Made by a program: the position numbers and the translations under genes | Source of the DNA: Phallusia mammillata | Taxonomy: Eukaryota | Direction of reading: 5' to 3' | Assembly (NCBI GenBank): GCA_965637545.1 | Contig: OZ281496.1 | Coordinates: forward strand, 28,210,001 to 28,274,000 | Length of the DNA stretch: 64,000 bases | Notes under the pieces: generated by a model | Told to the model about the DNA's origin: nothing | Databases searched by the model: none | What the model saw: only the letters and a program-made list of their open reading frames with translations | Shown: positions 310 to 52,196 of the stretch, one piece after another | Layout: each line of letters begins with the position of its first letter | How positions within the stretch are numbered: the first letter of the stretch is position 1

Positions 310-425
310 GTGATTGGACGGTTGAAGAGCGCCAATGCCACGTTTCAGGAGCAAGCGTTCTGATTGGTCGAAAGAAAAAGAAAAAAGGGAATCGTCACAC
401 CTTGAACGCGTGCGGCCGATCAGTC
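310..425 (+). promoter_or_regulatory. Pol II promoter of unit 1: three CCAAT boxes plus Inr
   Basis: ATTGG 313-317, CCAAT 332-336, ATTGG 363-367 and Inr-like TCAGTC 420-425, followed by a pyrimidine run and exon 1. Repeated at the head of every unit. Confidence 0.7.
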
Positions 426-541
426 TTTCTTTAGCAACTCGTGTTGAAGGTGGTTGTGTTGACGGGAGTCTGCTAGAAGATTGAAAAGATGCAGGTAACT
501 TGTAAATTTGCTTGTTTACTTGTTACCTATAATTCTACTTG

Positions 542-605
542 TTCGGTGTCTATGATGGTAGTAAACTTTGGTGCACACTGGTTTACTCCTGCACAGATAC
601 CGGAA
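542..605 (+). ncRNA. Intronic hairpin A (candidate pre-miRNA); copies at 2083, 3631, 5178, 8349 and 9911; damaged copy ~6921
   Basis: TTCGGTGTCT pairs with AGATACCGGAA, and AGTAAAC with GTTTACT. The loop contains GTGCAC. The 3' arm GGTTTACTYCTGCACAGATACCGGAA is conserved while the 5' arm varies. Confidence 0.55.
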
Positions 606-804
606 TCAAACTTACATAGTTGGTTAGGGCTTGCAGAAAATTTTTAAGAGCAAAGTTGTGTTGGATCATTTTGTTTCAGATTTAAGTAAGAAGAACAATA
701 TGATTTGGGAAGACATTGTCTGTGAAGAGGAATGATGATTTACGGAAACAGGCGAGTAAATGTGTTTGTAAATGTTATGAATATAATGTCAAAGTTTGTA
801 AGTC

Positions 805-854
805 CAGCATGGGCGGATAGTTTAAACGTGCACTTATTCTGTCTTCGCATGTCG
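805..854 (+). ncRNA. Intronic hairpin B in a GC-AG intron; copies at 2351, 3899, 5446, 7135, 8614 and 10180
   Basis: CAGCATG pairs with CATGT(C/T)G, and GGCGGATAG with TTATTCTGTC. ACGTGCACTTATTCTGTCTTC is present in all 7 units and, inverted, at 18105-18135. Confidence 0.55.
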
Positions 855-1110
855 AGATGCTAGATTGTTTTTAATAAACTAGTTAATATATCGCCTTAAA
901 TACGTGGTACTGCTTCTGCTTTGTTTTGCAGAAAAGGAACACTGATGTCGATTTGAGTTGCAACCTAACTGCGTAAAGGACAAAGAACAGATGCCTAAAG
1001 CTCCAAAAGGTATGTTATGTTGAATACGCTTTCAAATAGGCCTGCTTGTGCAAATTATGTAACATAATAATATGTAGGGCTTTATTTATAATCATTTCTA
1101 CCATATTGTA

Positions 1111-1183
1111 GCGAATATCTAACCCGGTGTTTATGCATGTTGTACTTCAGTTTTTTGCATGTCATGTGTTTTCGGCTATTCGT
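1111..1183 (+). ncRNA. Intronic hairpin C; copies at 2658, 4206, 5753, 7436, 8922 and 10333; truncated copy at 11115
   Basis: CGAATAGC/GCTATTCG closing stem (CGAATATC in units 1-4), upper ATGCATG/CATGTCAT stem, loop starting TTGYAC or TGGCAC. Confidence 0.5.
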
Positions 1184-1568
1184 TCCTCGCAATCGGTGGA
1201 AGTGAGAGTTTATTTTTTTGCCGCTAAAATTAAATTAATATCAAATACATTAATAGTTCTGTTGAATTATCGCATAAGATTTTGGTCGTAATGTTGACTC
1301 ATCCTGTCGTAGAATGTTGACATATGCTTTAGCACATAATAATGTAGCTTTAATTTTCCATAAGTTTCTGCCTCCTTGTTTTATTTCCTGCAGCATACGT
1401 AAATGCGATGCGACCGTATTCCATGACGAGGAGCTAACGTAAAGGAACATGGCCTTTGAATTTGAGGTAACTAATCTAGCCTTACTGTTGTTGTTGTTTT
1501 TTATTAAATTAAAGTCATAAAATATATGTAGCATACAGCCTGTTACATACCACAGCAAAACACTTTAC

Positions 1569-1635
1569 GTATAGTCCTATATGGGTAAATGAACCAACAA
1601 GTCCCGTGATTGTTCGTTTATACCGTTTCTATGAC
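1569..1635 (+). ncRNA. Intronic hairpin E; copies at 3114, 4662, 6209, 7887 and 9374; diverged copy ~10831
   Basis: GGTAAATGAAC pairs with GTTCGTTTATACC, and GTATAG with CTATGAC. Conserved position in intron 4. Confidence 0.4.
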
Positions 1636-1874
1636 ATTGTACATGTAATCTTTGATTTTTTGCCGATGGGGAATAAATGAATGCTACACTTGCGCTACTT
1701 CATTCTTGTTCGACGGCCTCGGTGAAGGTTGCTGGTGTATTTGGACTTCGTGGATTTCTAAGAAGTCTGACGGATGTTTCAACTTCCGAAGAAGAAGTAC
1801 ATACAAATATCAGGTACTCCTGTTTTGCACATTGTTTTTGTGATGCAGAAGTAAACTATTTTTTGCAGTTATGT

Positions 1875-1962
1875 AATTGGACGGTTGAAGAGCGCCAATG
1901 TGACGTTTCACGAGCAAGCGTTCTGATTGGTCGAACGCAAAAAGAAAACAAGGGGTCATTCT
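1875..1962 (+). promoter_or_regulatory. Unit 2 promoter, short allele (also units 3, 4 and 6)
   Basis: ATTGG-GCCAATGTGACGT-CTGATTGG cassette, then TCATTC at 1956-1961. About 30 bp between the proximal CCAAT box and the Inr are missing relative to unit 1. Confidence 0.6.
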
Positions 1963-4900
1963 TTCTTGAGCAGCTCGTGGTGAAGGTGGTTGTGTTGACG
2001 GGAGTCTGCTGGAAGATGGAAAAGATGCAGGTAGTTTACTTGTACATTTTCTTGTTTTACTTGTTACCTATAATTCTACTTGTTCTGTGTCTATGATAGT
2101 AGTAAACTTTGGTGCACACTGGTTTACTTCTGCACAGATACCGGAATATAGCTTACTAGTTGGTTAAGGCTTGCATAAGTTTTCAAGAACAAAGTTAAAG
2201 TTCTGTTGGATCATTTTGTTTCAGATTTAAGTAAGAAGAACAATATGATTTGGGAAGACATTGTCTGTCAAGAGGAATGATGATTTACGGAAAACAGGCG
2301 AGTAAATGTGTTTGTAAATGTTATGAATATAATGTCAAAGTTTGTAAGTCCAGCATGGGCGGATAGTTTGAACGTGCACTTATTCTGTCTTCGCATGTCG
2401 AGATGCTAGATTGTTTTTAATAAACTAGTTAATATATCGCCTTAAATACGTGGTACTGCTTCTGCTTTGTTTTGCACAAAAGGAACACTGATGTCGATTT
2501 GAGTTGCAACCTAACTGCGTAAAGGACAAAGAACAGATGGCCTAAAGCTCCAAAAGGTATGTTATGTTGAATACGCTTTCAAATAGGCCTGCTTGTGCAA
2601 ATTATGTAACATAACAATATGTAGGGCTTTATTTATAATCATTTCTACCATATTGTAGCGAATATCTAACCCGGTGTTTATGTATGTTGTACTTCAGTTT
2701 TTTGCATGTCATGTGTTTTCGGCTATTCGTTCCTCGCAATCGGTGGAAGTGAGAGTTTAATTTTTCGCCGCTAAAATTATATTAATATCAAATACATTAA
2801 TAGTTCTGTTGAATTATCGCATAAGATTTTGGTCTTAATGTGGACTTATCCTGTCGTAGAATGTTGACATATGCTTTAGCACATAATAATGTAGCTTTAA
2901 TTTTCCATAAGTTTCTGCCTCCTTGTTTTATTTCCCGCAGCATACGTAAATGCGATGCGACCGTATTCCATGACGAGGAGCTAACGTAAAGGAACATGGC
3001 CTTCCAATTTGAGGTAACTAATCTAGCCCTACTGTTTTTGTTTTTTTATTAAATCAAAGTCATAAAATTTATGTAGCATACAGCCTGTTACATACCACAG
3101 CAAAACACTTTACGTATAGTCCTATATGGGCAAATGAATCCACAAGTCCCGTGATTGTTTCTTTATACCGTTTCTATGACATTGTACATGTAATCTTTGA
3201 TTTTTTTTTGCAGGTAAAGGAAAGATGAATGCTACACTTGCGCTACTTCATTCTTGCTCGACATCCTGGGTGAAGGTTGGTGGTGTATTTTGACTTCGTG
3301 GATTTCTAAGAAGTCTTACGGATGCTTCAACTTCCGGAGAAGAAGTACATACAGACACCAGGTACTCCTGTTTTGTAAATTGTTTTTGTGATGCAGAAGT
3401 AAACTATTTTTTGCAGTTATGTAATTGGACGGTTGAAGAGCGCCAATGTGACGTTTCACGAGCAAGCGTTCTGATTGGTCGAACGCAAAAAGAAAAAAAG
3501 GGGTCATTTTTTCTTGAGCAACTCGTGTTGAAGGTGGTTGTGTTGATGGGAGTCTGCTAGAAGATGGAAAGGATGCAGGTTAATTACTTGTAAATGTGCT
3601 TTTTTTACTTGTTACATCTAAACGTACTTGTTCGGTGTCTATGTCAGTATTAAACCTGGATGCACAGTGGTTTACTCCTGCACAGATACCGGAATATAGC
3701 TTACTAGTTGGTTAAGGCTTGCATAAGTTTTCAAGAACAAAGTTAAAGTTCTGTTGGATCATTTTGTTTCAGATTTAAGTAAGAAGAACAATATGATTTG
3801 GGAAGACATTGTCTGTCAAGAGGAATGATGATTTACGGAAAACAGGCGAGTAAATGTGTTTGTAAATGTTATGAATATAATGTCAAAGTTTGTAAGTCCA
3901 GCATGGGCGGATAGTTTAAACGTGCACTTATTCTGTCTTCGCATGTCGAGATGCTAGATTGTTTTTAATAAACTAGTTAATATATCGCCTTAAATACGTG
4001 GTACTGCTTCCGCTTTGTTTTGCAGAAAAGGAACACTGATGTCGATTTGAGTTGCAACCTAACTGCGTAAAGGACAAAGAACAGATGGCCTAAAGCTCCA
4101 AAAGGTATGTTATGTTGAATACGCTTTCAAATAGGCCTGCTTGTGCAAATTATGTAACATAACAATATGTAGGGCTTTATTTATAATCATTTCTACCATA
4201 TTGTAGCGAATATCTAACCCGGTGTTTATGTATGTTGTACTTCAGTTTTTTGCATGTCATGTGTTTTCGGCTATTCGTTCCTCGCAATCGGTGGAAGTGA
4301 GAGTTTAATTTTTCGCCGCTAAAATTATATTAATATCAAATACATTAATAGTTCTGTTGAATTATCGCATAAGATTTTGGTCTTAATGTGGACTTATCCT
4401 GTCGTAGAATGTTGACATATGCTTTAGCACATAATAATGTAGCTTTAATTTTCCATAAGTTTCTGCCTCCTTGTTTTATTTCCCGCAGCATACGTAAATG
4501 CGATGCGACCGTATTCCATGACGAGGAGCTAACGTAAAGGAACATGGCCTTCCAATTTGAGGTAACTAATCTAGCCTTACTGTTTTTGTTTTTTTATTAA
4601 ATCAAAGTCATAAAATTTATGTAGCATACAGCCTGTTACATACCACAGCAAAACACTTTACGTATAGTCCTATATGGGCAAATGAATCCACAAGTCCCGT
4701 GATTGTTTGTTTATACCGTTTCTATGACATTGTACATGTAATCTTTGATTTTTTTTGCAGGTAAAGGAAAGATGAATGCTACACTTGCGCTACTTCATTC
4801 TTGCTCGACATCCTGGGTGAAGGTTGGTGGTGTATTTTGACTTCGTGGATTTCTAAGAAGTCTTACGGATGCTTCAACTTCCGGAGAAGAAGTACATACA

Positions 4901-6707
4901 GACACCAGGTACTCCTGTTTTGTAAATTGTTTTTGTGATGCAGAAGTAAACTATTTTTTGCAGTTATGTAATTGGACGGTTGAAGAGCGCCAATGTGACG
5001 TTTCACGAGCAAGCGTTCTGATTGGTCGAACGCAAAAAGAAAAAAAGGGGTCATTTTTTCTTGAGCAACTCGTGTTGAAGGTGGTTGTGTTGATGGGAGT
5101 CTGCTAGAAGATGGAAAGGATGCAGGTTAATTACTTGTAAATGTGCTTTTTTTACTTGTTACATCTAAACGTACTTGTTCGGTGTCTATGTCAGTATTAA
5201 ACCTGGATGCACAGTGGTTTACTCCTGCACAGATACCGGAATATAGCTTACTAGTTGGTTAAGGCTTGCATAAGTTTTCAAGAACAAAGTTAAAGTTCTG
5301 TTGGATCATTTTGTTTCAGATTTAAGTAAGAAGAACAATATGATTTGGGAAGACATTGTCTGTCAAGAGGAATGATGATTTACGGAAAACAGGCGAGTAA
5401 ATGTGTTTGTAAATGTTATGAATATAATGTCAAAGTTTGTAAGTCCAGCATGGGCGGATAGTTTAAACGTGCACTTATTCTGTCTTCGCATGTCGAGATG
5501 CTAGATTGTTTTTAATAAACTAGTTAATATATCGCCTTAAATACGTGGTACTGCTTCCGCTTTGTTTTGCAGAAAAGGAACACTGATGTCGATTTGAGTT
5601 GCAACCTAACTGCGTAAAGGACAAAGAACAGATGGCCTAAAGCTCCAAAAGGTATGTTATGTTGAATACGCTTTCAAATAGGCCTGCTTGTGCAAATTAT
5701 GTAACATAACAATATGTAGGGCTTTATTTATAATCATTTCTACCATATTGTAGCGAATATCTAACCCGGTGTTTATGTATGTTGTACTTCAGTTTTTTGC
5801 ATGTCATGTGTTTTCGGCTATTCGTTCCTCGCAATCGGTGGAAGTGAGAGTTTAATTTTTCGCCGCTAAAATTATATTAATATCAAATACATTAATAGTT
5901 CTGTTGAATTATCGCATAAGATTTTGGTCTTAATGTGGACTTATCCTGTCGTAGAATGTTGACATATGCTTTAGCACATAATAATGTAGCTTTAATTTTC
6001 CATAAGTTTCTGCCTCCTTGTTTTATTTCCCGCAGCATACGTAAATGCGATGCGACCGTATTCCATGACGAGGAGCTAACGTAAAGGAACATGGCCTTCC
6101 AATTTGAGGTAACTAATCTAGCCTTACTGTTTTTGTTTTTTTATTAAATCAAAGTCATAAAATTTATGTAGCATACAGCCTGTTACATACCACAGCAAAA
6201 CACTTTACGTATAGTCCTATATGGGCAAATGAATCCACAAGTCCCGTGATTGTTTGTTTATACCGTTTCTATGACATTGTACATGCAATCTTAGATTTTT
6301 TGCAGATAAGGAATAAATGAATGCTACACTTGCGCTACTTCATTCTTGTTCGACGGCCTGGGTGAAGGTTGGTGTTGTATTTGGACTTTGTGAATTTCTA
6401 AGAAGTTTGACGGATGTTTCAACCTTCAGACTAGAAGTACTTACAGATTTTAGGTACTACTGTTTGTTAAATTGTGGGTTTTTTGTGGTGCAGAAGTAAA
6501 CTAGGGTACACACAGTAGTAAATTTCTTATTGATTTCGTAAGAGTTATTTTACGCAAAAGCATCATACTAATTAGGTCATAAATTACGTCTCATTTTCGC
6601 ATTTTATTTTGGGTCAGTTCAGCGCTTTTATTTGTGCCTCTAGAAAATTAATTAAGGTTTTCGTAGCATTTCAGGCCACGTCCGGTTAATTGCCCCCAAT
6701 CAGCTAC

Positions 6708-6825
6708 GTGATTGGACGATTAAAGAGCGCCATTGTGACGTTTCAGGAGCAAGCGTTCTGATTGGTTGAAAGAAAAAAGAAAAAAAGGAATTGTCACACC
6801 TTGGACGCGTGCGGTCGGTCATTCT
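6708..6825 (+). promoter_or_regulatory. Unit 5 promoter, long allele, with duplicated upstream flank
   Basis: GTGATTGGACG...GCCATTGTGACGT...CTGATTGG...TCATTC (6819-6824). The middle box reads CCATT. 6520-6710 is homologous to 130-310. Confidence 0.6.
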
Positions 6826-9680
6826 TTCTTTAGCAGCTCGTGGTGAAGGTGGCTGTGTGGACGGGAGTCTGCTAGAAGATGGAAAAGTTGCAGGTAATTT
6901 GCTTTTTGTACATTTACTCGTTGTCTTTGTAGGTAGTAAACTTTGGTACTTCTGCATAGTTAACGGAATATAACGTACATCGTTGCTACGGTTTGCATAA
7001 AATTACAAGAACAAAATACTGATGTTCATTTTGTTTCAGGAAAAGACATTTCCACAAGAGGAATGATGATTTACGGAAAACAGGCGAGTTAATATGTTTG
7101 TAAACGTAAACAATCTATGTCCAAACATTTAAGTCCACTTGGGCGGATAGTTTAAACGTGCACTTATTCTGTCTTCCCATGTTGAGATGCTATTTTTGTA
7201 TATTAAACTAGATAGTATATCGCCTTAAATGCCTGGTACTGCCTCCGCTTCGTTTTGCAGAAAAGAAACACGGATGCAGATTTGAGTATAGCAACCTAAC
7301 ACAAACTGCATAAAGGACAAATAACAGATGACCTCTAAAAGGTATGCTGTGCTGAACACGCTTTCAAATAGTGCAAATAGTGTAACATAACAATATATGC
7401 AGGGCTTAAATTGAAACCACTTCTACCATATTGTAACGAATAGCTGGCCTGACTTTTATGCATGTGGCACTTCACTTTTTTGCATGTCATGTGTCTGCGG
7501 CTATTCGTTCCTCGCAATCGGTGGAAGTGAGAGTTCTATTTTTCGCCGCTAAAATTAAATTAATATCAAATACATTAATAGTTCTGTTGAATTATCGCAT
7601 AAGATTTTTGGCGTAATGTGGACTTATCCTGTTTTCGCATGTTGACATATACTTAAGCACATAATAATGTAGCTTTAATTTTCCATAAGTTTCTGCCTCC
7701 TTGTTTTATTTCCCGCAGCATACGTAAATGCGATGCGACCGTATTCCATGACAAGGAGCTAACGTAAAGGAACATGGCCTTCGAATTTGAGGTAACTAAT
7801 CTAGCCTTACTGTTTTTTTTATTAAATCAAAGTCATAAAATATATGTAGCATACAGCCTGTTACATACCGCAGCAAAACACTTTACGTATAGTCCCATAT
7901 GGGCAAATGAATCAACAAGTCCCGTGATTGTTTGTTTATACCGTTTCTATGACATTGTACATGTAATCTTTGATTTTTTGCAGATGAGGAATAAATTAAT
8001 GCTACACTTGCGCTACTTCATTCTTGCTCGACGGCCTGAGTGGAGGTTGGTGGTGTATATGGACTTTGTGAATTTTTGAAAGGTATGACGGATGTTTCAA
8101 CTTTTGTGATGCAGAAATAAACTATTTTTTGCAGTTATGTAATTGGACGGTTGAAGAGCGCCAATGTGGCGTTTCACGAGCAAGCGTTCTGATTGGTCGA
8201 AGGCAAAAAGAAAAAAAGGGGCCATTTTTTCTTGAGCAACTCGTGTTGAAGGTGGTTGTGTTGACGGGAGTCTGCTAGAAGATGGAAAAGATGCAGGTAG
8301 TTTACTTGTACATTTTATTGTTTTACTTGTTACCTATAATTCTACTTGTTCTGTGTCTATGATGGTAGTAAACTTTGGTGCACACTGGTTTACTCCTGCA
8401 CAGATACCGGAATATAACTTACATAGTTGGTTAAGGATTGCATAAAAAAAAACCAAGAGCAAAGTTCTGTTGGATCATATTGTTTCAGATTTAAGTAAGA
8501 AGAACAATATGATTGTGAAAGTCATTGTCTGTGAAGAGGAATGATGATTTACGGAAACAGGCGAGTAAAGGTGTTTGTAAATGTTATCAATCTAATGTTA
8601 AAGTTTGTAAATCCAGCATGGGCGGATAGTTTAAACGTGCACTTATTCTGTCTTCGCATGTTGTGATGCTAGATTGTTTTTAATAAACTAGTTAATATAA
8701 CGCCTTAAATACCTGGTACTGCTTTCACTTTGTTTTTCAGAAAAGAACACTCATGCAGATTTGAGTTGCAACCCAACTGCTTAAAGGACAAAGAACAGAT
8801 TGCTTAAAGCTATAAAAGGTAGGTTATGTTGAATAAGCTTCAAATAGTGCGTGATTGCGCAAATCGTGTAACATAACAATATATGTAGGGCTTCATTTAA
8901 AACCACTTCTACCATATTGTAACGAATAGCTAACCCGGTGTTTATGCATGTGGCACTTTTGTTTTTTTGCATGTCATGTGTTTTCGGCTATTCGTTCCTC
9001 GCAATCGGTAGAAGTGAGAGTTCTATTTTTCGCCGCTAAAATTATATTAATATCAAATACATTAAAAGTTCTGTTGAATTATCGCATAAGATGTTGGTCG
9101 TAATGTGGACTTATCCTGTCTTCGCATGTTGACATATACTTTAGCACATAATAATGTAGCTTTAATTTTCCAAAAGTTTCTGCCTCCTTGTTTTATTTCC
9201 TGCAGCATACGTATGTGGGATCCGATCGTTTTCCGTAACGAGGAGCTAACGTAAAGGAACATGGCCTTCGAATTTGAGGTAACTAATCTAGCCTTACTGT
9301 TTTTTTTATTAAATTAAAGTCACAAAATATATGTAGCATACAGCCTGTTACATATCACAGCAAAACACTTTACGTATAGTCCTATATGGGCAAATGAATC
9401 CACAAGTCCCGTGATTGTTTGTTTATACCGTTTCTATGACATTGTACATGTAATCTTTGATTTTTTTGCAGGTAAAGGAAAGATGAATGCTACACTTGCG
9501 CTACTTCATTCTTGCTCGACGGCCTGAGTGAAGGTTGGTGGTGTATTTTGACTTCGTGGATTTCTAAGAAGTCTGACGGATGTTTCAACTTTCGGACTAG
9601 AAGTACTTACAGATATCAGGTACTCCTGTTTTGTAAGTTGTTTTTGTGATGCAGAAATAAACTATTTTTTGCAGTTCTGT

Positions 9681-9800
9681 AATTGGACGGTTGAAGAGCG
9701 CCAATGTGACGTTTCAGGAGCAAGCGTTCTGATTGGTCGAAAGCAAAAAGAAAAAAAAAGGAATCGTCACACCTTGGACGCGTGCGGCCGGTCATTCTTT
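9681..9800 (+). promoter_or_regulatory. Unit 7 promoter, long allele
   Basis: Same CCAAT triplet, TGACGT and GGTCATTCTTTCT initiator as unit 1. Confidence 0.6.
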
Positions 9801-10510
9801 CTTTGACAACTCGTGGTGAAGGTGGCTGTGTCGACGGGAGTCTGCTAGAAGATGGAAAAGATGCAGGTAGTTTGCTTGTACATTTTCTTGTTTTACTTTA
9901 AATCTACTTGTTCGGTGTCTATGATAGTAGTGAACTTTGGGTGCACACTGGTTTACTTCTGCACAGATACCGGAATATAACTTACATAGCTGGTTAAGGC
10001 TTGCATAAATTTTCAAGAGCGAAGTTCTGTTGGATCATTTTGTTACAGATTTAAGTAAGAAGAACAATATGATTTGGGAAGGCATTGTCTGTCAAGAGGA
10101 ATGATGATTTACGGAAAACAGGCCAGTAAATGTGTTTGTAAATGTTATGTTATCAATCTAATGTTAAAGTTTTTAAGTCCAGCATGGGCGGATAGTTTGA
10201 ACGTGCACTTATTCTGTCTTCGCATGTTGAGCTCTAAAAGGTTTGTTATGTTACATTAGGTATTAAATAGTGCCTAGTGTAACATAACAATATATGTAGG
10301 GCTTTAATTGAAACCACTTCTACCATATTGTAGCGAATAGCTATCCCGGTGTTTATGCATGTGGCACTTCAGTTTTTTGTATGTCATGTGTTTTCGGCTA
10401 TTCGTTCCTCCCAATCGGTGGAAGTGAGAGTTCTATTTTTCGCCGCTAAACTTAACATTAATATTAAATGCATTAACAGTTCTGTTGAATTATCCCATAC
10501 GATTTTGGTT

Positions 10511-10563
10511 TAATATGGGAAGGCAGTGTAACGTGCACTTACCCTGCCTTCGCTTATTGACAT
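10511..10563 (+). ncRNA. Hairpin D, the only intact copy in array 1 (paralog of B)
   Basis: GAAGGCAG-T-GTAA / TTAC-C-CTGCCTTC stem with a CGTGCAC loop. Units 1-6 lack about 17 nt of this 5' arm. Confidence 0.5.
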
Positions 10564-11160
10564 ATTTTAAAACACGATAAAGTAGCTAATTGTTTTCATA
10601 CATTTCTGCCGCTGTTGTTTTATTTCATGCAGATAGGCAGATGCGATGGCATTGTATTCAGGATCGGAAAGGAGCTAAAAAAGGATAATGACTTTCGACA
10701 TTGAGGTAACTAACCTAGCCGTACTGTTTTTTTTTGTGTGTGTTTTTTTCTTTGTCTTTTGTTATAAAACTTAATGCGGTCTTTACTCAATCCCAACGCT
10801 TGTATATCAAAGTAAAACACTTCTACTTAAAGTCACGTACTGTAATTAAACCAATAAGCCCTGCTGTGACTGCTTGATTTTTTACCTTTACATGACAACG
10901 AACACATAATCTTTTCGTTTTTCTGCAGGTGAAGAAACCTATTTGGTCTGTGAATTTCTACGAAGATGTTTTAACTTCAAGACATCAGGTACTACTTTTG
11001 TTATTTTTTTGTGGTGCGGAAGTAAACTAAGGTATACACAGTAGTAAACTTCGTTACTTGTGTCATTTTTTATTTCGGCTTATACTAGATCGCTAACACT
11101 CCTACCATGTTGATGCGAATAGCTATCCCGGTGCTTGAGCATGTTGCACTTTGTTTTTTT

Positions 11161-11201
11161 GGGGTTTTGGGTTTTGGGGTTTTTGGGTTTTTTGGGTTTT
11201 G
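11161..11201 (+). repeat. (G3-4 T4-6)n microsatellite with G-quadruplex potential
   Basis: GGGGTTTTGGGTTTTGGGGTTTTTGGGTTTTTTGGGTTTTG: five G-tracts. Confidence 0.8.
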
Positions 11202-11869
11202 TCAACAAGGGCAGAAGTGTTATGCTCGGTTAATTTTCTAAAAAGAATAGCCTGGTTGTTAACAACATAAATTAATAACGTCATTAGGTCTCGTTACGTA
11301 AACATAGCTTGTTAATAACCTTGTTGATGTCTTTTTACAGGTTATAGACAAGTACATAATTAACTGTTTGTCATTTAATTCAGTTGTTGTTTAATGCTAG
11401 CATGTGAAAGTTGTTTAATGTGCCATTATCCTGCCTTTACATGTTGTGATATTTTAATGTGATAGAAAGTATGTTATATGCAATTTTTTGTTACTGCTTT
11501 TTCTTAATTTACAGAGAAAACTCCCAAGCAATTAAGACACATTTCTTACCATGAAGACAAGTCAAGGAAAACAACAAAACTCCCCCATGAAAGATAAGTT
11601 ATTGTTTACGGTATCACTAACTTGTGTATTTTTTGCATGAAAATTTGATTGTAGCATGTTCTGCTTTGCATTGGCGCATGTTTAGTTGTCTTTTCTGGTG
11701 CTTGTTGCGCATTTCTGCATCCTTAACATTGAAGAACGGTATTTTTGTTGTTGCAGATGTTAGTTGCTATGTATGATCGGAAACGGCTGAAACGGATAGT
11801 TGAAAACTTGAGAGAGTTGGAACACAGAGAGCTGGACGAATCACCACAAAAGATTGAACTAATTCTCAA

Positions 11870-14170: not shown

Positions 14171-14237
14171 TTTTTCTGTGGTGAAATAAAATCGTTTTGA
14201 TTTTTGTCAGTTTTGTGGGGGGCGTCACAGGAAAAAA

Positions 14238-15525: not shown

Positions 15526-15534
15526 CAAATAGAA

Positions 15535-17625
15535 AACCCAACAACTTTCAACACAAACAACATGGAAAACTGCAAAAAACACAACATAGAAAACGCACAA
15601 CTCTCAACACAGACAACATAGAAAAACGCAACAACTCACAACACAGACAACATAGAAAAACGTACAACTCACAACACAGAAAAATGCACAACTCTCAACA
15701 CAGACAACATAGAAAAATGCTAGATAAACGAACAACACAGGCAACATAGAAAAACGCCCAACTCTCAACACAGACAACATAGAAAAATGCAATACACATA
15801 CCATAGAAAACGCACAACTCTCAACACAAATAACATATAAAAACGCAACAACCCACAACACAGACAACATAGAAAAACACAACATAGAAAAAAACTTCCA
15901 TACACAGGCAACATAGAAAAACGCAAAAAAACACAACATAGAAACGCAAAAACGCACAACATAGATACACTAATAAAAAACGCACAACTCTAGAAAACTG
16001 CAAAAAAACATAGCATAGAAAACCCAACAACTTTCAACACAGACAACATGGAAAACTGCAAAAAACACAACATAGAAAACGCACAACTCTCAACACAGAC
16101 AAACATCACAACTCTAACAACTCACAACACAGACAACATAGAAAAACGTACAACTCACAACACAGAAAAATGCACAACTCTCAACACAGACAAACTCACA
16201 ACTCTCAACACAGACCACATAGAAAAATGCATAACTCACAAAAGCGGAGAACATAGAAAAATACAACATAGATAAACGAACAACACAGGCAACATAGAAA
16301 AACGCCCAACTCTCAACACAGACAACATAGAAAAATGCAATACACATACCATAGAAAACGCACAACTCTCAACACAAATAACATATAAAAACGCAACAAC
16401 CCACAACACAGACAACATAGAAAAACACAACATAGAAAAAAACTTCCATATACAGGCAACATAGAAAAACGCAAAAAACACAACATAGAAACGCAAAAAC
16501 GCACAACATAGATACACTAATAAAAAACGCACAACTCTAGAAAACTGCAAAAAACACAGCATAGAAAACCCAACAACTTTCAACACAGACAACATGGAAA
16601 ACTGCAAAAAACACAACATAGAAAACGCACAACTCTCAACACAGACAAACATCACAACTCTCAACACAGACAACATAGAAAAATGCAATACACATACCAT
16701 AGAAAACGCACAACTCTCAACACAAATAACATATAAAAACACAACCACCCACAACACAGACAACATAGAAAAACACAACATAAAAAAAAAACTTCCATAC
16801 ACAGGCAACATAGAAAAACGCAAAAAACACAACATAGAAACGCAAAAACGCACAACATAGATACACTAATAAAAAACGCACAACTCTAGAAAACTGCAAA
16901 AAACACAGCATAGAAAACCCAACAACTTTCAACACAGACAACATGGAAAACTGCAAAAAACACAACATAGAAAACGCACAACTCTCAACACAGACAAACA
17001 TCACAACTCTAACAACTCACAACACAGACAACATAGAAAAACGCAACAACTCACAACATAGAAAAACGCAACAACTCACAACACAGAAAAATGCACAACT
17101 CTCAACACAGAAAAATGCACAACTCTCAACACAGACCACATAGAAAAATGCATAACTCACAAAAGCGGAGAACATAGAAAAATACAACATAGATAAACGA
17201 ACAACACAGGCAACATAGAAAAACGCCCAACTCTCAACACAGACAACATAGAAAAATGCAATACACATACCATAGAAAACGCACAACTCTCAACACAAAT
17301 AACATATAAAAACGCAACCACCCACAACACAGACAACATAGAAAAACACAACATAAAAAAAAATTCCATATACAGGCAACATAGAAAAACGCAAAAAACA
17401 CAACATAGAAACGCAAAAACGCACAACATAGATACACTAATAAAAAACGCACAACTCTAGAAAACTGCAAAAAACACAGCATAGAAAACCCAACAACTTT
17501 CAACACAAACAACATGGAAAACTGCAAAAAACACAACATAGAAAACGCACAACTCTCAACACAGACAAACATCACAACTCACAACACAGACAACATAGAA
17601 AAACGCAACAACTCACAACACAGAC
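15535..17625 (+). repeat. CA-rich minisatellite arm (core CACAACATAGAAAAACGC), inverted counterpart of the 11870-14170 arm
   Basis: Its reverse complement shares the GCGTTT(TT)CTATGTTGT core. The higher-order anchor AACATGGAAAACTGC occurs at ~15560, 16045, 16591, 16940 and 17511. Confidence 0.97.
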
Positions 17626-18104
17626 AAAAAGTGGAGAAGGCTACGGAGGCAGAGAATGTACGAAATAACGAATCTCAAAGCGTACTTAAAAAAAGAATTT
17701 AATGCATACAATATTTTGACAAAAAGTCAGACAAGAAGTTCCTGGTGGCAGTGTTCAGCAAATTTGCGAAGGTCTACGAGGGTAAAAACGGTTTGCGACG
17801 AAATCTAAAACAAAATAATGTTCAACCATAAAAGCTATGTACATCAAAATGGAGAATATCTAATAGCATCTAATGTTAATGGTTTACGTTTATTGTGAAA
17901 TGAAATGAAATGTTACATGTAGGAGATGTGTTTTATTAGCATGTTTGCAAGTTACCTTAAACGTGAAAAGGCTTTGTTCCTCACAATTCCAGTTTCTTCT
18001 CCTCACGGAAGACGACCATCGCTTTTTCTCGTAAACTGTAAAACAAAAACAGGGAGGCAGAAACTTATAGACAATTAAAGCTAGATTATCGTGTGCAAAA
18101 ATAT

Positions 18105-18156
18105 GTCAACATGCGAAGACAGAATAAGTGCACGTCAAACTGCATTCCCATCTTAG
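18105..18156 (-). ncRNA. Hairpin D/B homolog in array 2
   Basis: Minus strand ACGTGCACTTATTCTGTCTTCGCATGTTGACAT, followed by the same intron 3' end as array 1 intron 3. Confidence 0.5.
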
Positions 18157-19827
18157 ACCAAACACTAAATGTAATAAAACAATTAGGATTATATCACAAG
18201 AACTAATGACGGCATTTGCGCCAGACAAAAATTTACGAATTATGACATTTTAAAAATACTTTGTTTCGCAAATTAGCCAAGCAAACACTTTTACTAATGC
18301 TGACCCACTAATAGTTACCCAAAACACATAACACGTAAAAAAGTAAAATGCAACATGCTCAAGCACAGGGTTAATCAGCATGGTAGAAGCGTTTGTTCGC
18401 TGTTTTTTAAACAGCATTTCAAATTTAGTATTAGGCGGATTTAATTTATCTTTACTCTGTGAATCTTAGGCCCTACTTACATTGCTGACTTTCGTATCAG
18501 AGCCGTATCAGGTGGTGTTGTGACTCTAATCTGAAACAACCAACAAAAGTTCAATAGTTATCCCTCAGAGTTAGGCAAAATTAATCTATTTTAACCTTAT
18601 ATGGCACTTAATACACAAGCGGTTGGTTTATATGTTGTTATATTAGCGGCGCGGAATACATTAAACACTTATTAAACACTCACTAAGTACACAAGCGGTA
18701 CGTTATATATGTTTTATAAATAAGTAATGTATATTTTAAGTATTGTACACGTATGCGTTTTATTATATTGTAGTGTTGTGCCTACTGTGTTTGTTTAGTT
18801 AGGTTTTCTCGTTTTATATGCTACATCTGTGTAACGTTTGCATTAATAAATATTACTTACGCTCTTACGTACTATTATATTATTGTTAGTTTATGCAACT
18901 GGAACGCGCTATTTAACTTACATTGCTGCCTTGAAAGTGCTTTCATCCATCTGGGGACGTAGGTTTATATCCGAAATCTGAAAAAACAACAGTTGTTCAG
19001 CGTGTACAAATCAGGCAGCTTATTCAGGACATTATTTGTTTTTAAAAATGTATTGAAACATATTCAATATAATTATTAACCCTCCCATAGACATAGTCCC
19101 TACATACATCACGCATTTTTTTACGGTCAAGTAAAATATAACTCAGAAACTACATGGCAATACAAATAAGGTCACAACAGCATTACTTACATTCAGTATC
19201 CAGTCCTTCAGTACATCGATTCCATATGAAAACTCCTGGGATGTTTACATCAGGAAAGGATTGTTGATCCTACACTAAAAACAACAGGTTCTCAGTTCCG
19301 CGAATAAATGTGTACAATTCAGAGTAGGTTTGTATCAGCTACAAACTAATGGTTGTAAATTATGCATAAATAAATTGTACATACACCCATTATATAAGCA
19401 ACCAAGCCAATAACATACTTACAACTTTGGCGTTATCGCTTCATGGTCTCGGTAACACTTCCCTTCGGCATCCGATATTTTCCTGCAATACCAAAGCAGA
19501 AGCAGTACCACGAATTCACAGACAATTTAAACTGCATTAAAATATGTTTTTGGCAAGTCAACATGTGGAGACGGCATAGTGCACTTTACACAGTCCCCAC
19601 ATGCTGGTCCTATTATATATTATAAACTACACACTATATATGTTCAACCCTTTTAAAATCTACTTGCCTATTATTTTAAGTTCCATGTTGCAAAACCTCG
19701 CATGCCACTTCAGTCGCATAAAAGGACTTTCTTTCCATTGCTTTATTGGATAACCTGAAACAAAATAAACTAGCAGTATAAACAAGTATTTGAAAAGTAA
19801 CCTAGTTATATTAACTCGCAAACAAAA

Positions 19828-19893
19828 TTTCGGTATCTTGCAAAAAGTAAACCAGTGTTCACCCAAGTTTACTTCTACACAGAAACCGAACAA
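19828..19893 (-). ncRNA. Intact hairpin A homolog in array 2 (another at 21801-21864)
   Basis: Minus strand TTGTTCGGTTTCT-GTGTAGAAGTAAAC-loop-GTTTACTTTTTGCA-AGATACCGAAA. Confidence 0.55.
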
Positions 19894-20261
19894 ATAGCAC
19901 CTAATGTTAATGTAATACGTATATTGTGAAATAAAATGTTAAGTGTAGGAGATGTAGTTTGCTACCATGATTACAAGTTACCTTAAACGTAAGAAGGCCT
20001 TGTTCCCCTCAATTCCAGTTTCTTCTCGTCACAGAAACGACCATCGCTTTTCTACCGAAACTGCAAAAAAAAACAGGGACGCAGAAACGTATAGACAATA
20101 AAGTTACGTTATCATGTGCTAAAATATGTCAACATGCGAAGACAGGTATAAGAACTATTGTGTGGTTACGTCACAAACAACGATGACGTCATAAAACTTT
20201 TAACGCTGAACGTCCTTATATTAATCAAAAATTAGCAGCGCACTTCTACCGATGCCGACAA

Positions 20262-20343
20262 ACAAATAGCCTAGTCCTCTTAAAACACACGCCATGCAGA
20301 ATTGTAAGTGCAACATGCTCAAGCACGGGCTATAGCTATTCGT
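20262..20343 (-). ncRNA. Hairpin C homolog in array 2 (another ~18320-18390)
   Basis: Minus strand ACGAATAGC...GTGCTTGAGCATGTTGCAC...GCTATTTGT. The 5' arm matches the 11115 copy. Confidence 0.5.
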
Positions 20344-23285
20344 ATCAACATGCTAGAAGTGTTTTTAAATTAAACTTTACGTGAGTTAATTGTGTCATAC
20401 ATTGTACGTTTTGCGGCGAATGTCATTGTTTAGCAACTGTTAGTCAACTTGCATTGCTTCATTGGAAGGTCTTTTATCCATCTCTGAAAGTATTTGGGCT
20501 TTACATCAAAAATCTGAAACAAATCAACAATATAAAGTATTTTAACATCGGGGAAGGATAGCAAAAGCTTTCGCAGCCTTTTTACAACTTAATTTGTTTT
20601 TAAAAATGTAATTAAGCATATTCAATTTATCAATGTTCTTTCCAATAAACCCCTCAACTAAGTTACGTTATCTAAAGTATTATGAACGTATTGTAGCGTT
20701 GTGCATACTGTGTGTTTGTTTGTTATTTTTAATTGCTTTTTTATTATTAAGACGGCACATCTGTTTAACGTTTGCATTATTAAATATTACTTACGCTCTT
20801 ACGTATTATCATATCATAGTTAGTTTATTTAACTTACATATTGCTGCCTTTGAAGGGCTTTTATCCATCTCGGACCGTAGGTTTATATCCAAAATCTGAA
20901 AAAAATCAGCAGTTGTTTAGAGTGTACAAATAAGGTCAAAGTAAGGCATTGAAAGCAAAATGTTTCGCAGCTTAGTTAGAACATTATTTGTTTCTAAAAA
21001 TTTATTGAAACATATTTAATATAATTATTATTAACCCTCAAACTACATTTTCCATAAACATAGGCACCTTACATACATCACGCATTTTTACGGCAAAGTG
21101 AAATGTGCATAGATTCGCAAATTACATTGCAATACCAATCAGGTCATAACAGCACTACTTACATTCAGTATCCAGTCATTTAATACATCGCTTCAACAAG
21201 AAAATTCCCGGGATGTTTACATCAGGAATGGATTGTTGATCCTACACTAAAAACAACAGGATATCAGCTCAGCGAATGAATGTGCACAATTCAGAGTAAG
21301 GTTTGTATCCACTATAAATTAATGGTTGTAAATTATAAAGAAATAAATGGTACATACACCCATTATATAAGCACGCAAGTCACTAACAAACCTTTCAACT
21401 TTTCCGTTATGACTTTATGGTCTCCGAAATACTTTCGTTCCGATTCCGATATTTTCCTGTAAACCCAAAGCAGAAGCAGTACCACGAATTCAGATACAAA
21501 TTAAACAACAGCAAAATATGTTTTTGGCAAGTAAACATGTGGAGACGGCATAGTGCACTTTACACAGTCCCCACATGCTGTCCCTATTATATTAGAAACT
21601 ACACACTTAAATATGTTCAACTCTTATTATGTGCACTTGCCTATTATTTTAAGTTTCATGTTACGAGACCTCGCTTGCCACTTCAGTCGCATAAAAGGAC
21701 TTTCTTTCCATTGCTTTATTGGATAACCTGAAACAAAATGAACTAGCAGTATAAACAAGTATTTAAAAAGTAAACTAAATATATTAACTCGCAAACTATA
21801 TTTCGCTATCAGCGCAAGTAAACCAATGTGCACCCAACTTTACTTCTCCACAGAAACCGAACAAGTTTACTTCGAGTAATTTAACCCAAAATTATGTACA
21901 TTAGCATGGAGAATATCTAATAGCACCTAATGTTAATGTAATACATTTAAAGTATGATAAACGTAAACGTAGTTTGGCATTGTATATATCTGCATCTTGT
22001 TTTTTTTTTTATTAAGACGGCACATCTGTGTAACGTTTGCATTATTAAATATTACTTACGCTCTTACGTATTATCATATCATAGTTAGTTTATTTAACTT
22101 ACATATTGCTGCTTTGGAAGGGCTATTATCCATCTCGGACCGTAGGTTTATATCCAAAATCTGTAAAAAATCAGCAGTTGTTTAGAGTGTACAAATAAGG
22201 CCTAAAGTAAGGCTGAAATAGCAAAATGTTTCGCAGCTTAGTTAGAACAATATTTGTTTCTAAAAATTTATTGAAACATATTTAATATAATTATTATTAA
22301 CCCTCAAACTACATTTTCCATAAACATAGGCACCTTACATATATCACGCATTTTTACGGAAAAGTGAAATGTGCATAGATTCACAAATTACATTGCAATA
22401 CCAATAATGTCACAACAGCATTACTTACATTCAGTATCCAGTCATTCAATACATCGCTTCAACAAGAAAACTCCCGGGATGTTTACATCCGGAATGGATT
22501 GTTGATCCTACACTAAAAACAACAGGTTCTCAGTTCGGCGAATAATGTGCACAATTCAGAGTAAGGTTTGTATCTCCTGTAGCGGTCATGATATTAATGT
22601 GCACAAAGACTGCCGTTTACGTTTCACTACTATAAACTAATGGTTGTTAATTATGCAGAAATAAATGGTACATACACCCATTATATAAGCACCCAAGTCA
22701 CTAACAAACTTACAACTTTGACGTTATCGCTTCATGGTCTCGGTAACACTTCCCTTCGGCTTCCGATATTTTCCTGCAATACCAAAGCAGAAGCAGTACC
22801 ACGAATGTACAAAAAATTAAACAACATTAAACTCCGTTTTTAACAAGTCAACATGTGGAGACGGCATAGTGCACTTTACACAGTCCCCACATGCTGTCCC
22901 TACTATATATTATAAACTACACACTACATATGTTCAACTCTTATAAAATCTACTTGCCTATGTATTTTAAGTTCCGTGTTGCAAGACCTCGCATGCCACC
23001 TCAGTCGCATAAAAGGACTTCCTTTCCATTACTTCTTTGGGTAACCTGAAACAAAATAAACCCGCTGCAGAAACAATTATTTGAAAAGTAACCTGGTTAT
23101 ATTAACTCGCAAACAATATTTCGGTATCACTGCAAGAAGTAAACCAGTAAACCATCATTCTATAAGAAAACTCCTGGGATGTTTACATCAGAAATGGATT
23201 GTTGACCCTACACTAAAAAGGTTCTCAGTTCAGCGAATGAATGTGTACAATTCAGAGTAAGGTTTGTATCTACTATAAACTAATT

Positions 23286-23349
23286 GTTGTCAATCATGCA
23301 GAAATAAATGGTACGTACACCCATTATATAAGCACCCAAGTCACTAACA
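23286..23349 (-). ncRNA. Hairpin F (8 copies, one per module)
   Basis: GTTAGT/ATTGAC, GTGC/GCAT and AATGG/CCATT stems with a GTGTA(T/C)GTA loop. Starts just after the exon-y donor. Confidence 0.4.
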
Positions 23350-23490
23350 AACCTTTCAGCTTTTCCGTTACTGACTTTATGGTCTCCGTAACACTTTCGT
23401 TCCGATTCAGATATTTTCCTGTAAACCGAAGCAGAAGCAATACCACAAATATACAAAAAAATAAACAACATTAAACTCCGTTTGTAGCAA

Positions 23491-23540
23491 GTCAACATGT
23501 GGAGACGGCATAGTGCACTTTACACAGTCCCCACATGCTG
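23491..23540 (-). ncRNA. Hairpin B-prime (8 near-invariant copies), candidate pre-miRNA
   Basis: Minus strand CAGCATGTGGGGAC-TGTGTA-AAGTGCAC-TATGCC-GTCTCCACATGTTG, extended by a TAGTAGG/CTTGCTA basal stem. Lies in a GC-AG intron. Confidence 0.6.
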
Positions 23541-26444
23541 TCCCTACTATATATTATAAACTACACACTACATATGTTCAACTCTTATAAAATCTACTTG
23601 CCTATGTATTTTAAGTTCCGTGTTGCAAGACCTCGCATGCCACCTCAGTCGCATAAAAGGACTTCCTTTCCATTACTTCTTTGGGTAACCTGAAACAAAA
23701 TAAACCCGCTGCAGAAACAATTATTTGAAAAGTAACCTGGTTATATTAACTCGCAAACAATATTTCGGTATCACTGCAAGAAGTAAACCAGTAAACCATC
23801 ATTCTATAAGAAAACTCCTGGGATGTTTACATCAGAAATGGATTGTTGACCCTACACTAAAAAGGTTCTCAGTTCAGCGAATGAATGTGTACAATTCAGA
23901 GTAAGGTTTGTATCTACTATAAACTAATTGTTGTCAATCATGCAGAAATAAATGGTACGTACACCCATTATATAAGCACCCAAGTCACTAACAAACCTTT
24001 CAGCTTTTCCGTTACTGACTTTATGGTCTCCGTAACACTTTCGTTCCGATTCCGATATTTTCCTGTAAACCGAAGCAGAAGCAATACCACAAATATACAA
24101 AAAAATAAACAACATTAAACTCCGTTTTTAACAAGTCAACATGTGGAGACGGCATAGTGCACTTTACACAGTCCCCACATGCTGTCCCTACTATATATTA
24201 TAAACTACACACTATATATGTTCAACCCTTATAAAATCTACTTGCCTATGTATTTTAAGTTCCGTGTTGCAAGACCTCGCATGCCACCTCAGTCGCATAA
24301 AAGGACTTCCTTTCCATTACTTCTTTGGGTAACCTGAAACAAAATAAACCCGCTGCAGAAACAAGTATTTGAAAAGTAACCTAATTACATTAACTCGCAA
24401 ACAAAATTTCGGTATCACTGCAAGAAGTAAACCAGTAAACCATCGATTCCATTAGAAAACTCCTGGGATGTTTACATCAGGAATGCATTGTTGATGATAC
24501 ACTAAAAAGGTTCTCAGTTCAGCGAATGAATGTGCACAATTCAGAGTAAGGTTTGTATCTACTATAAACTAATTGTTGTCAATCATGCAGAAATAAATGG
24601 TACATACACCCATTATATAAGCAACCAAGTCACTAACAAACTTACAACTTTGGCGTTATCGCTTCATGGTCTCGGTAATACTTCCCTTCGGCTTCCGATA
24701 TTTTCCTGCAGTACCAAAGCAGAAGCAGTACCACGAATTCACAGACAATTTAAACTGCATTAAAACATGTTTTTAACAAGTCAACATGTGGAGACGGCAT
24801 AGTGCACTTTACACAGTCCCCACATGCTGGTGCTATTATATATTATAAACTACACACTTATATATGTTCAACCCTTATAAAATCCACTTGCCTATTATTT
24901 TAAGTTCCATGTTGCGAGACCTCGCATGCCACTTCAGTCGCATAAAAGGACTTTCTTTCCATTGCTTATTTGGATAACCTGGAACAAAATAAACTAGCAG
25001 TAGAAACATGTATTTGAAAATAAAAACAAATATATTTACTTACAAACTATAATGCGGTATCACTGCAAGAAGTAAACCAGTAAACCATCGATTCCATAAG
25101 AAAACTCCTGGGATGTTTACATCAGGAATGCATTGTTGATCCTACACTAAAAAGGTTCTCAGTTCAGCGAATGAATGTGCACAATTCAGAGTAAGGTTTG
25201 TATCTACTATAAACTAATTGTTGTCAATTATGCAGAAATAAATGGTACATACACCCATTATATAAGCACCCAAGTCACTAACAAACTTACAACTTTTCCG
25301 TTGTGACTTTATGGTCTCCGTGACACTTTCGTTCCGATTCCGATATTTTCCTGTAAACCCAAAGCAGAAGCAGTACCACGAATTCACAAAAAATTAAACA
25401 ACATCAAATTCCGTTTTCAACAAGTCAACATGTGGAGACGGCATAGTGCACTTTACACAGTCCCCGCATGCTGGTCCCACTATACATAATAAGTTAGACG
25501 CTTATATATGTTCAACTCTTATAGTATGTACTTGCCTATTATTTTAAGCTCCGTGTTGCAAGATCTCGCATGCCACTTCAGTTGCATAAAAGGACTTTCA
25601 TTCCATTACTTCTTTGGATAAACTGAAACAAAATAAACTCGCTGCAGAAACAAGTATTTGAAAGTAACCTAATTACATTAACTTGCAAACAATATTCCGG
25701 TATCACTGCAAGAAGTAAACCAGTAAACCATCGATTCCATAAGAAAACTCCTGGGATGTTTACATCAGGAATGCATTGTTGATCCTACACTAAAAACAAC
25801 AGGTTCTCAGTCCAGCGAATGAATGTGCACAATTCAGAGTAAAGTTTGTATCTACTATAAACTAATTGTTGTTAATTATGCAGAAATAAATGGTACATAC
25901 ACCCATTATATAAGCACCCAAGTCACTAACAAACCTTTGAACTTTTCCGTTATGACTCTATGGTCTCCGTAACACTTTCGTTCCGATTCCGATAATTTCC
26001 TGTAATGCAGAAGCAGTACCACGAATATACAAAAAATAAACAACATTAAACTCCGTTTGTAGCAAGTCAACATGTGGAGACGGCATAGTGCACTTTACAC
26101 AGTCCCCACATGCTGACACTACTATATATTATAAACTACACACTTATTAATGTTCTACTAAGCTACTTGCCTATTATTTTAAGTTCCGTGTTGCGAGACC
26201 TCGCATGGCACTTCAGTCGCATAAAAGGATAACCTGAAACAATAAACTAGCAGTAGAAGCGTGTATTTGAAAATTAACCTAATTATATTTACTCGTAAAC
26301 AGTGTGCATCCAAGTTTACTTCTACACAGACACCAAACAAGTTCGCTTAAAAACGAGATTACCTGCATCTTTTCCATTTGTAAGTCTTCTTTATGGGCAG
26401 ACTCCCGTCCACACAGCCACCTTCAACACGAGCTGTCAAAGAAA

Positions 26445-26575
26445 GAATGATCGACCCCACGAGTCCAAGGTATGACGATTTCCTTTTTTCTTTTTGCTTT
26501 CGACCAATCAGAACGCTTGCTCCTAACACGTCACATAGGCGCTCTTTTAACTGACCAATGACAGGTGTTATTGCA
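26445..26575 (-). promoter_or_regulatory. Array 2 promoter, same cassette as array 1
   Basis: Minus strand reads ATTGG (26555-26559), GAGCGCCTATGTGACGT, GCAAGCGTTCTGATTGGTCGAAAG (CCAAT 26504-26508) and Inr TCATTC (26445-26450). Confidence 0.75.
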
Positions 26576-52186: not shown

Positions 52187-52196
52187 CCTTATAAGG
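52187..52196. promoter_or_regulatory. CArG box (SRF site) in the putative promoter of the LIM gene
   Basis: CCTTATAAGG matches CC(A/T)6GG. It lies in a GC-richer patch ~1.7 kb upstream of the ATG exon, with CREs at 51377, 52577 and 52955. Confidence 0.55.

What the first reader, a model, noticed from the sequence alone, without database searches (positions are those of the whole stretch)
310..26575. Twin, convergent, amplified non-coding host genes carrying several families of intronic stem-loops: candidate undescribed small-RNA (miRNA-like) system
Seen: the same promoter and exon 1 occur on + (7 times) and on - (once, 26363-26575). Both drive chains of mostly 65-150-nt exons with good splice sites and no long spliced ORF. 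Most introns hold a 50-80-nt hairpin, and hairpin arms stay recognisable between the two arrays while the flanking intron sequence has diverged. Families A, B/D and C are shared between arrays; E is seen in array 1 and F in array 2. Established: poorly conserved non-coding exons around conserved intronic RNAs are the hallmark of miRNA and snoRNA host genes. Inference: a lineage-specific, dosage-amplified small-RNA cluster. I recognise none of the arms as a known miRNA or snoRNA.
Basis: partly seen in the sequence, partly recalled or inferred. Interest (0 to 1): 0.88.

Follow-up and report, generated by a model that had tools for sequence, protein, structure and literature searches.

The report
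Twin sea-squirt genes hosting intron hairpins
A sea squirt (Phallusia mammillata) has two facing, repeatedly duplicated genes that make no protein; one is shown to be spliced, and both keep dozens of small RNA hairpins in their introns far better than anything around them, so they probably make undescribed microRNA-like RNAs, although no small-RNA data were available to prove it.

Summary
Mostly confirmed. The window is Phallusia mammillata. Seven promoter-bearing units (+) and one long gene (-) face each other across a 5.8-kb satellite core. Three RNA-type runs splice the minus-strand gene at the predicted sites, including a GC-AG intron, and the DNA run does not. The longest ORF in the exon chains tested is 33 codons. 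Exons have drifted to near-random identity between arrays, while hairpins A, B/B'/D and C keep 65-90%. The 50-nt B' core differs by 1% among eight copies, its flanks by 17-21%. F is not a hairpin, and E is one in a single unit only. No Rfam, Ciona or Halocynthia match; not at the syntenic place in four other tunicates. Best reading (0.55): a C19MC-like host of new intronic microRNA-type RNAs. Odd features keep a non-microRNA product open: short stems, an invariant GUGCAC loop, and a fixed 66-79 nt distance to the 3' splice site. Processing into small RNAs is untested, and array 1 expression was not examined. The scan noted similar hairpin-in-repeated-intron genes at three other places on this piece of the genome.

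The parts
303..11870 (+). Array 1: seven tandem units of about 1.4-1.7 kb (85-98% identical), each with CCAAT-type promoter, exon 1 and four further non-coding exons, plus a unique decayed tail
   Evidence: expression not tested
303..494 (+). Promoter and exon 1 of unit 1 (two CCAAT boxes, pyrimidine run, exon ending in a GT donor); same motif at 1912, 3460, 5007, 6747, 8178, 9718
542..604 (+). Hairpin A, intron 1 (complete copies also near 2083, 3631, 5178, 8349, 9911; degenerate at 6911)
   Evidence: (z -3.8)
804..855 (+). Hairpin B in the GC-AG intron 2 (copies near 2350, 3898, 5445, 7134, 8613, 10179)
1094..1204 (+). Long hairpin C, intron 3 (copies near 2641, 4189, 5736, 7418, 8904, 10315; partial at 11093)
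   Evidence: (z -5.1 and -4.1 for units 6 and 7)
10243..10290 (+). Hairpin E: perfect 22-bp stem starting 2 nt after a donor site; strong in unit 7 only
10510..10561 (+). Complete hairpin D (B paralogue with compensatory changes)
   Evidence: (z -3.5)
11397..11448 (+). Diverged D-type hairpin in the tail (loop hexamer altered)
11871..17630 (.). Satellite core: GT-rich arm 11871-14185, 24-nt satellite 14238-15518, AC-rich arm 15524-17630; the two arms are about 67% reverse complements
17640..26570 (-). Array 2: one promoter, about 30 non-coding exons, eight exon2-B'-exon3 modules (644-bp core repeats 84-91% identical)
26363..26564 (-). Promoter and exon 1 of array 2; RNA contig covers 26432-26363
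26234..26362 (-). Intron 1 (GT-AG, 129 nt), spliced in three RNA-type runs; holds a truncated A
26000..26170 (-). Intron 2 (GC-AG, 171 nt), spliced in RNA-type runs; holds B'
26066..26115 (-). B' 50-nt core (loop hexamers of the other seven copies at 25446, 24802, 24157, 23513, 22869, 21553, 19579)
   Evidence: (z -5.8)
25790..25934 (-). Intron 3 (GT-AG, 145 nt), spliced; holds conserved but unstructured G and F blocks
20242..20361 (-). Hairpin C of array 2 (second, more decayed copy at 18280-18395)
19829..19890 (-). Complete hairpin A of array 2 (decayed copy at 21796-21867)
   Evidence: (z -3.7)
18103..18158 (-). Hairpin D of array 2; 3' arm identical to array-1 B over 25 nt

Best explanation
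Both arrays descend from one old inverted duplication of a Pol II non-coding host gene. The spliced RNA is disposable (tiny ORFs, a likely nonsense-decay target: inferred). The selected products are the intronic hairpins. A and B/B'/D, possibly also C, are released from the intron or pre-mRNA as precursors of about 50-60 nt, either by Microprocessor acting on suboptimal short stems or by trimming of the excised intron. Dicer then cuts them to ~22-nt Argonaute-loaded RNAs. Dosage was raised in two ways: whole transcription units in array 1, internal modules in array 2. Shown: transcription and splicing of array 2, non-coding exons, strand-specific hairpin constraint. Inferred: processing, Argonaute loading, targets, dosage selection, expression of array 1.
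For: Five predicted introns are spliced in RNA-type runs and not in the DNA run. ORFs reach 33 codons at most. Between arrays, exons are at or near null identity (47-57% against about 45%) and hairpins at 65-90%. The B' invariant block is 50 nt with sharp edges: 2/50 variable columns against 52/98 in the flanks, and 1% against 8-21% pairwise difference elsewhere in the module. It reads as 22-nt arm + 6-nt loop + 22-nt arm with a 2-nt 3' overhang. Ciona precursors of 49-51 nt exist (PMC2884542). B/B'/D keep 84.6% of cells paired, with 4 pairs changed on both sides. 9 of 9 hairpins fold better on the transcribed strand. Most B, all B' and the tail D share the same bases at positions 2-7 of the 5' arm (AGCAUG; one B' differs only at position 8) while the rest of that arm diverges, as a seed family would. 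A GUG lies 22-25 nt into the core, where the loop UGU/G motif is expected (motif named in PMC6943042; position from my own knowledge). The layout matches C19MC (PMC2691840).
Against: No small-RNA reads were available. Arms are 19-29 nt and loops about 8 nt, short of the ~35-bp stem and >10-nt loop of optimal substrates (PMC10576077). The loop hexamer is kept in 17 of 18 B/B'/D copies while the arms diverge by about 25%, the reverse of the usual microRNA pattern. In B' I saw no basal UG or CNNC at the expected places (read by eye). A shows no compensatory change and C one. In C the terminal region is better kept than the putative duplex. Copies are related and may be homogenised, so the p-values overstate the evidence.
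Confidence: 0.55

Rival explanations
1. The hairpins are released as stable 40-115-nt intronic RNAs of an undescribed, non-diced kind. They mature in a splicing-coupled way like box C/D snoRNAs but have no boxes, and the loop (A/C-GUGCAC, self-complementary) is the working part, for protein binding or loop-loop pairing. A miR-451-like Ago-sliced product that runs across the loop is a variant of this reading.
For: The loop is nearly invariant while the stems covary. Every A, B, B' and D copy ends 66-79 nt before the 3' splice site, whereas the distance from the donor runs from 44 to 269 nt. C/D snoRNAs have such a position rule (PMC8162545). Stems are short. Exon 1 begins near a pyrimidine run, as in 5'TOP snoRNA hosts (seen in the sequence; start site not mapped).
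Against: The fixed distance may be inherited from one ancestral intron; orphan A halves keep it too. The hexamer is broken in three A copies and in the tail D. B and D have mismatches that would hinder slicing. No product was observed.
Confidence: 0.17
2. The hairpins are cis-acting splicing elements (GCAUG Rbfox-type sites, or a stem that shortens the intron ahead of the branch point). The gene's function lies in the spliced RNA or in the act of transcription.
For: Fixed position relative to the 3' splice site. GCAUG occurs in B, B' and C. A second conserved block lies just before the acceptors (68-81% between arrays).
Against: GCAUG is buried in a 14-bp helix in B' and is replaced with the pairing kept in D. 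The F/G intron is spliced without any stable hairpin. The exons are unconserved and non-coding, so there is no evident product for the splicing control to protect. Fifty invariant nucleotides is more than a splicing motif needs.
Confidence: 0.17
3. A transcribed, functionless repeat whose hairpins look conserved through local gene conversion or low mutability.
For: Many decayed copies (half A, half D, unit-5 A and B). Satellite-rich locus. Not found at the syntenic place in other tunicates.
Against: Three separate families beat their flanks between arrays whose flanks are at the null. Sharp 50-nt edges, compensatory changes, sense-strand folding bias, and retained splice sites including a GC donor in both arrays.
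Confidence: 0.08
4. Conventional box C/D or H/ACA snoRNA host genes.
For: Host-like exons, position near the 3' splice site, an ACA just after D.
Against: No intronic box C (the only RUGAUGA is exonic) and no conserved C-to-D pair. Single hairpins without an H-box partner; ACA is absent after B and B'. No Rfam hit.
Confidence: 0.03

Closest known systems
C19MC host gene (primates; PMC2691840)
   Same: Repeated non-coding exons in 400-700-nt units, each intron with a related hairpin; Pol II; lineage-restricted
   Different: C19MC microRNAs are proven Microprocessor products and Alu-associated. Here there are several hairpin families, short stems, promoter-bearing whole-unit repeats, and a convergent twin across a satellite core
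Ciona miR-2200/2201/2203 (miR-4000-type) clusters (PMC2884542)
   Same: Ascidian, tandemly amplified, short (~50-55 nt) precursors, paralogous families
   Different: Those are densely packed hairpins with little spacer, not one per intron; none of 12 arm words from this locus matched them in a homologous context
mir-451 in the mir-144/451 cluster (PMC10576077)
   Same: Short stem, small conserved loop, clustered with a longer hairpin (C could play the helper)
   Different: The stems here have internal mismatches and 7-8-nt loops; no sequence relation; no evidence of slicing
Non-coding snoRNA host genes (GAS5/SNHG type; reviewed in PMC8162545)
   Same: Unconserved short exons, tiny ORFs, intronic RNA at a fixed distance from the 3' splice site, pyrimidine run near the 5' end
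   Different: No C/D or H/ACA boxes; no Rfam match

Membership tests
Intronic small-RNA host gene | Transcribed and spliced at the predicted sites | tested here: met
   Array 2: five introns spliced in RNA-type contigs, not in the DNA run. The runs are 'RNA' by guess, but GT/GC-AG joints argue for RNA.
Intronic small-RNA host gene | Exons non-coding and poorly conserved | tested here: met
   ORFs of 33 codons at most in three chains; exon identity 47-57% against a null near 45%
Intronic small-RNA host gene | Intronic elements conserved above their flanks | tested here: met
Canonical microRNA | Stable unbranched hairpin on the transcribed strand | tested here: met
   A, B', most C and unit-7 D have z below -3.5; B and other D copies are weaker (-0.8 to -2.7); sense better than antisense in 9 of 9
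Canonical microRNA | At least 16 bp between two ~22-nt arms, precursor of about 50-70 nt | tested here: met
   17-26 bp; 50-nt invariant core; Ciona precursors of 49-51 nt
Canonical microRNA | About 35-bp pri-miRNA stem with a loop over 10 nt (optimal Microprocessor substrate; not absolute) | tested here: not met
   Arms 19-29 nt, loops about 8 nt for B/B'/D; A arms 27-29 nt with a larger loop; only C is long enough
Canonical microRNA | Mature arm or seed conserved more than the loop | tested here: inconclusive
   A 5' seed is shared by B, B' and the tail D, but the loop hexamer is the best-kept part of the family
Canonical microRNA | Stacked 20-24-nt reads on both arms, homogeneous 5' ends, 2-nt 3' overhangs | not testable with these tools
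   No small-RNA run offered; only contigs
Known microRNA family | Sequence match to a described family | tested here: not met
   Rfam: nothing at gathering score, best E 0.7; word searches of the Ciona and Halocynthia lists gave no homologous hit (one Ciona file is stored cut)
Box C/D snoRNA | Boxes C (RUGAUGA) and D (CUGA) framing the intronic RNA | tested here: not met
Box H/ACA snoRNA | Two hairpins with an H box and a terminal ACA | tested here: not met
   Single hairpins; ACA only after D
Mirtron | Hairpin ends coincide with splice sites | tested here: not met
   44-269 nt from donors and 66-79 nt from acceptors; only E abuts a donor

The most novel reading that the evidence does not exclude
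The introns release a new class of short, boxless, splicing-positioned hairpin RNAs whose near-invariant self-complementary GUGCAC loop is the functional part (either not diced, or sliced miR-451-style across the loop), encoded by a multi-locus family of amplified host genes in Phallusia.
Probability: 0.17. Interest if true: 0.85.

Novelty: new variant of a known kind. Interest (0 to 1): 0.6.

Why it matters
The C19MC-type design (repeated throw-away exons around intronic hairpins) is described from mammals. An independent case in a widely used ascidian model, with 35 complete hairpin copies of three undescribed families, would show the same solution to small-RNA dosage arising twice in chordates. 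One locus also shows two amplification routes side by side. My literature searches found no small-RNA study of Phallusia, so one sequencing run settles the main question. If the products are not microRNAs, the fixed intron position and conserved loop point to a new small-RNA class.

Tried and rejected
Rfam at gathering and E-value level: nothing. tRNA scan: none. Word searches in the Ciona and Halocynthia microRNA tables: chance hits only. The likeness of the loop to miR-92 or miR-430-type seeds was rejected because the hexamer sits in the loop and cannot start a Dicer product. A miR-30-like 12-mer in exon 4 of array 2 was rejected as exonic and as recalled from memory only. A Y-RNA likeness was rejected (Pol II, wrong geometry). 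Synteny through the neighbouring GLUT5-like gene: Ciona and Clavelina have an oxidoreductase gene 1.5-2.2 kb downstream, an unnamed tunicate contig has FLAD1, and Styela has no called gene within 10 kb; no model hit in any. The one weak Ciona hit is a plain palindrome. A degenerate B/B' pattern in metagenomes gave 7 hits, none supported by the model. No statistical link between A, C and B/D. The RNA contig start at 26432 and the contig breaks inside B' were not read as RNA ends, because contigs break where paralogues share words. Predicted exons were joined only inside one local script to measure ORF length, never in a search.
Full report
Source. The gene next to the locus (minus strand, about 28970-40700) matches a Phallusia mammillata GLUT5-like protein at 93-100% in exon-sized hits, so the window is from that ascidian. 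The window has no N.

Layout. Self-comparison shows seven tandem units on + between 303 and about 11000, 85-98% identical. A satellite core follows at 11871-17630, whose GT-rich and AC-rich arms are about 67% reverse complements. A minus-strand array runs from 26570 to 17640 with 644-bp repeats. The promoter motif occurs seven times on + and once on -; promoter plus exon 1 is 81% identical between arrays. Both arrays keep a GC donor at the end of exon 2. I infer an old inverted duplication of one gene, followed by amplification of whole units in array 1 and of internal modules in array 2.

Transcription. Three runs guessed to be RNA hold 5-8% of the words of array 2; nine others from three studies hold none, so expression may be restricted to some samples. 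I wrote down exon predictions first (two coordinates were one base off) and then laid contigs on 20650-26649. Joints fall at introns 26362-26234 (three runs), 26170-26000 (GC-AG, two runs; a third joins the same donor to a paralogous acceptor), 25934-25790, 21391-21247 and 22713-22513. The DNA run shows none of these joints. One contig also links sequence found only at 19191 and 18499, which indicates splicing of the 3' exons. ORFs in three predicted chains reach 20, 33 and 30 codons, and the first ATG stops within 3-20 codons.

Hairpins. Covariance models built from the copies find 8 complete A, 18 complete B/B'/D and 9 complete C hairpins, all within the two arrays. Fold z-scores are about -4 for A, -5.5 to -5.8 for B', -1.4 to -2.7 for B, -0.8 to -3.5 for D and -1.9 to -5.1 for C. 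All nine tested fold better on the transcribed strand. F, G and array-1 intron 4 do not fold better than shuffles, and E does so only in unit 7. Between arrays, hairpins are 65-90% identical, intron flanks 43-54% and exons 47-57%, against a null near 45%. Among eight B' copies a sharply bounded 50-nt block has 2 variable columns, the flanks 52 of 98. Pairwise difference is 1% in the block, 17-21% beside it, and 4-18% elsewhere in the module. B/B'/D show four pairs changed on both sides (6 of 500 shuffles; relatedness inflates this); A shows none and C one.

Features for a microRNA. The B' block equals two 22-nt arms, a 6-nt loop and a 2-nt overhang. Ciona precursors of 49-51 nt are on record (PMC2884542). 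Most B, all B' and the tail D share positions 2-7 of the 5' arm. The architecture matches C19MC (PMC2691840), and ascidians are known to amplify microRNA clusters.

Features against a plain microRNA. Arms are 19-29 nt and loops about 8 nt, below the ~35-bp and >10-nt optimum (PMC10576077). The loop hexamer GUGCAC is kept in 17 of 18 B/B'/D copies and recurs, less strictly, in A and F. Every A, B, B' and D copy ends 66-79 nt before the acceptor while the distance to the donor varies from 44 to 269 nt. That recalls the position rule of C/D snoRNAs (PMC8162545), but no boxes are present, and shared descent could explain it.

Relatives. No Rfam family matches, and no arm word matches the Ciona or Halocynthia lists in context. 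The arrays are absent downstream of the GLUT5-like orthologue in Ciona, Clavelina, Styela and an unnamed tunicate contig, so at this place they look lineage-specific. Within the species there are more copies: RNA contigs carry A and B' behind exon ends that do not occur in the window, one again with a GC donor. Earlier scan notes describe similar genes 407 kb, 424 kb and 1.48 Mb upstream; I could not check whether they hold the same families.

Mechanism. Shown: a spliced non-coding transcript (array 2) and purifying constraint on intronic RNA structures. Inferred: since the exons carry neither code nor conserved sequence, the hairpins are the product. Most likely (0.55) they are microRNA-type precursors with suboptimal stems, amplified for dosage. 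A non-diced or loop-spanning small RNA (0.17), cis splicing elements (0.17), neutral repeats (0.08) and true snoRNAs (0.03) are the rivals. The genes work like small-RNA host genes. I do not file the hairpins as microRNAs, because the defining read pattern could not be tested and the optimal-stem test was not met.

Verdict. A real, undescribed feature and a new variant of a known design; interest 0.6. One small-RNA library would decide it.

Noticed in passing
window 22575-22630: A 53-nt insertion in one array-2 intron; a 31-nt part of it belongs to a very high-copy sequence that is also abundant in the RNA-type runs (DNA depth far above single copy).
   Followed up: no
window 26300-26343 and 25445-25521 (loose ends): RNA contigs carry a complete A hairpin and a B' half behind exon ends not present in the window: further transcribed paralogous loci or very divergent alleles.
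   Followed up: partly
window 28968-40700, minus strand: GLUT5-like sugar transporter gene; its downstream neighbour in Ciona and Clavelina is an oxidoreductase gene, so synteny breaks where the arrays sit.
   Followed up: yes
window about 45000-54200, minus strand: Exon-sized ORFs with proline-rich and LIM-like segments (LPP/zyxin-like); Clavelina also has a LIM gene upstream of the transporter.
   Followed up: no
window 28360-28775: About 415-bp stretch with short terminal inverted repeats, probably a MITE, just past the transporter's 3' end (seen in the sequence).
   Followed up: no
window 33304-34052: Two tandem ~370-bp copies (75% identical) inside a transporter intron.
   Followed up: no
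window 26434-26451 (minus) and matching places in array 1: A pyrimidine run, usually followed by AG, at the front of exon 1 could be a TCT/5'TOP start or a spliced-leader acceptor; contigs cannot tell which.
   Followed up: partly
window 2458-2478, 1655-1665, 10120-10127: Some array-1 units have damaged splice sites (unit 2 exon-3 acceptor, unit 1 exon-5 acceptor, unit 7 exon-2 donor), and unit 7 has lost exon 3: birth-and-death decay among copies.
   Followed up: partly
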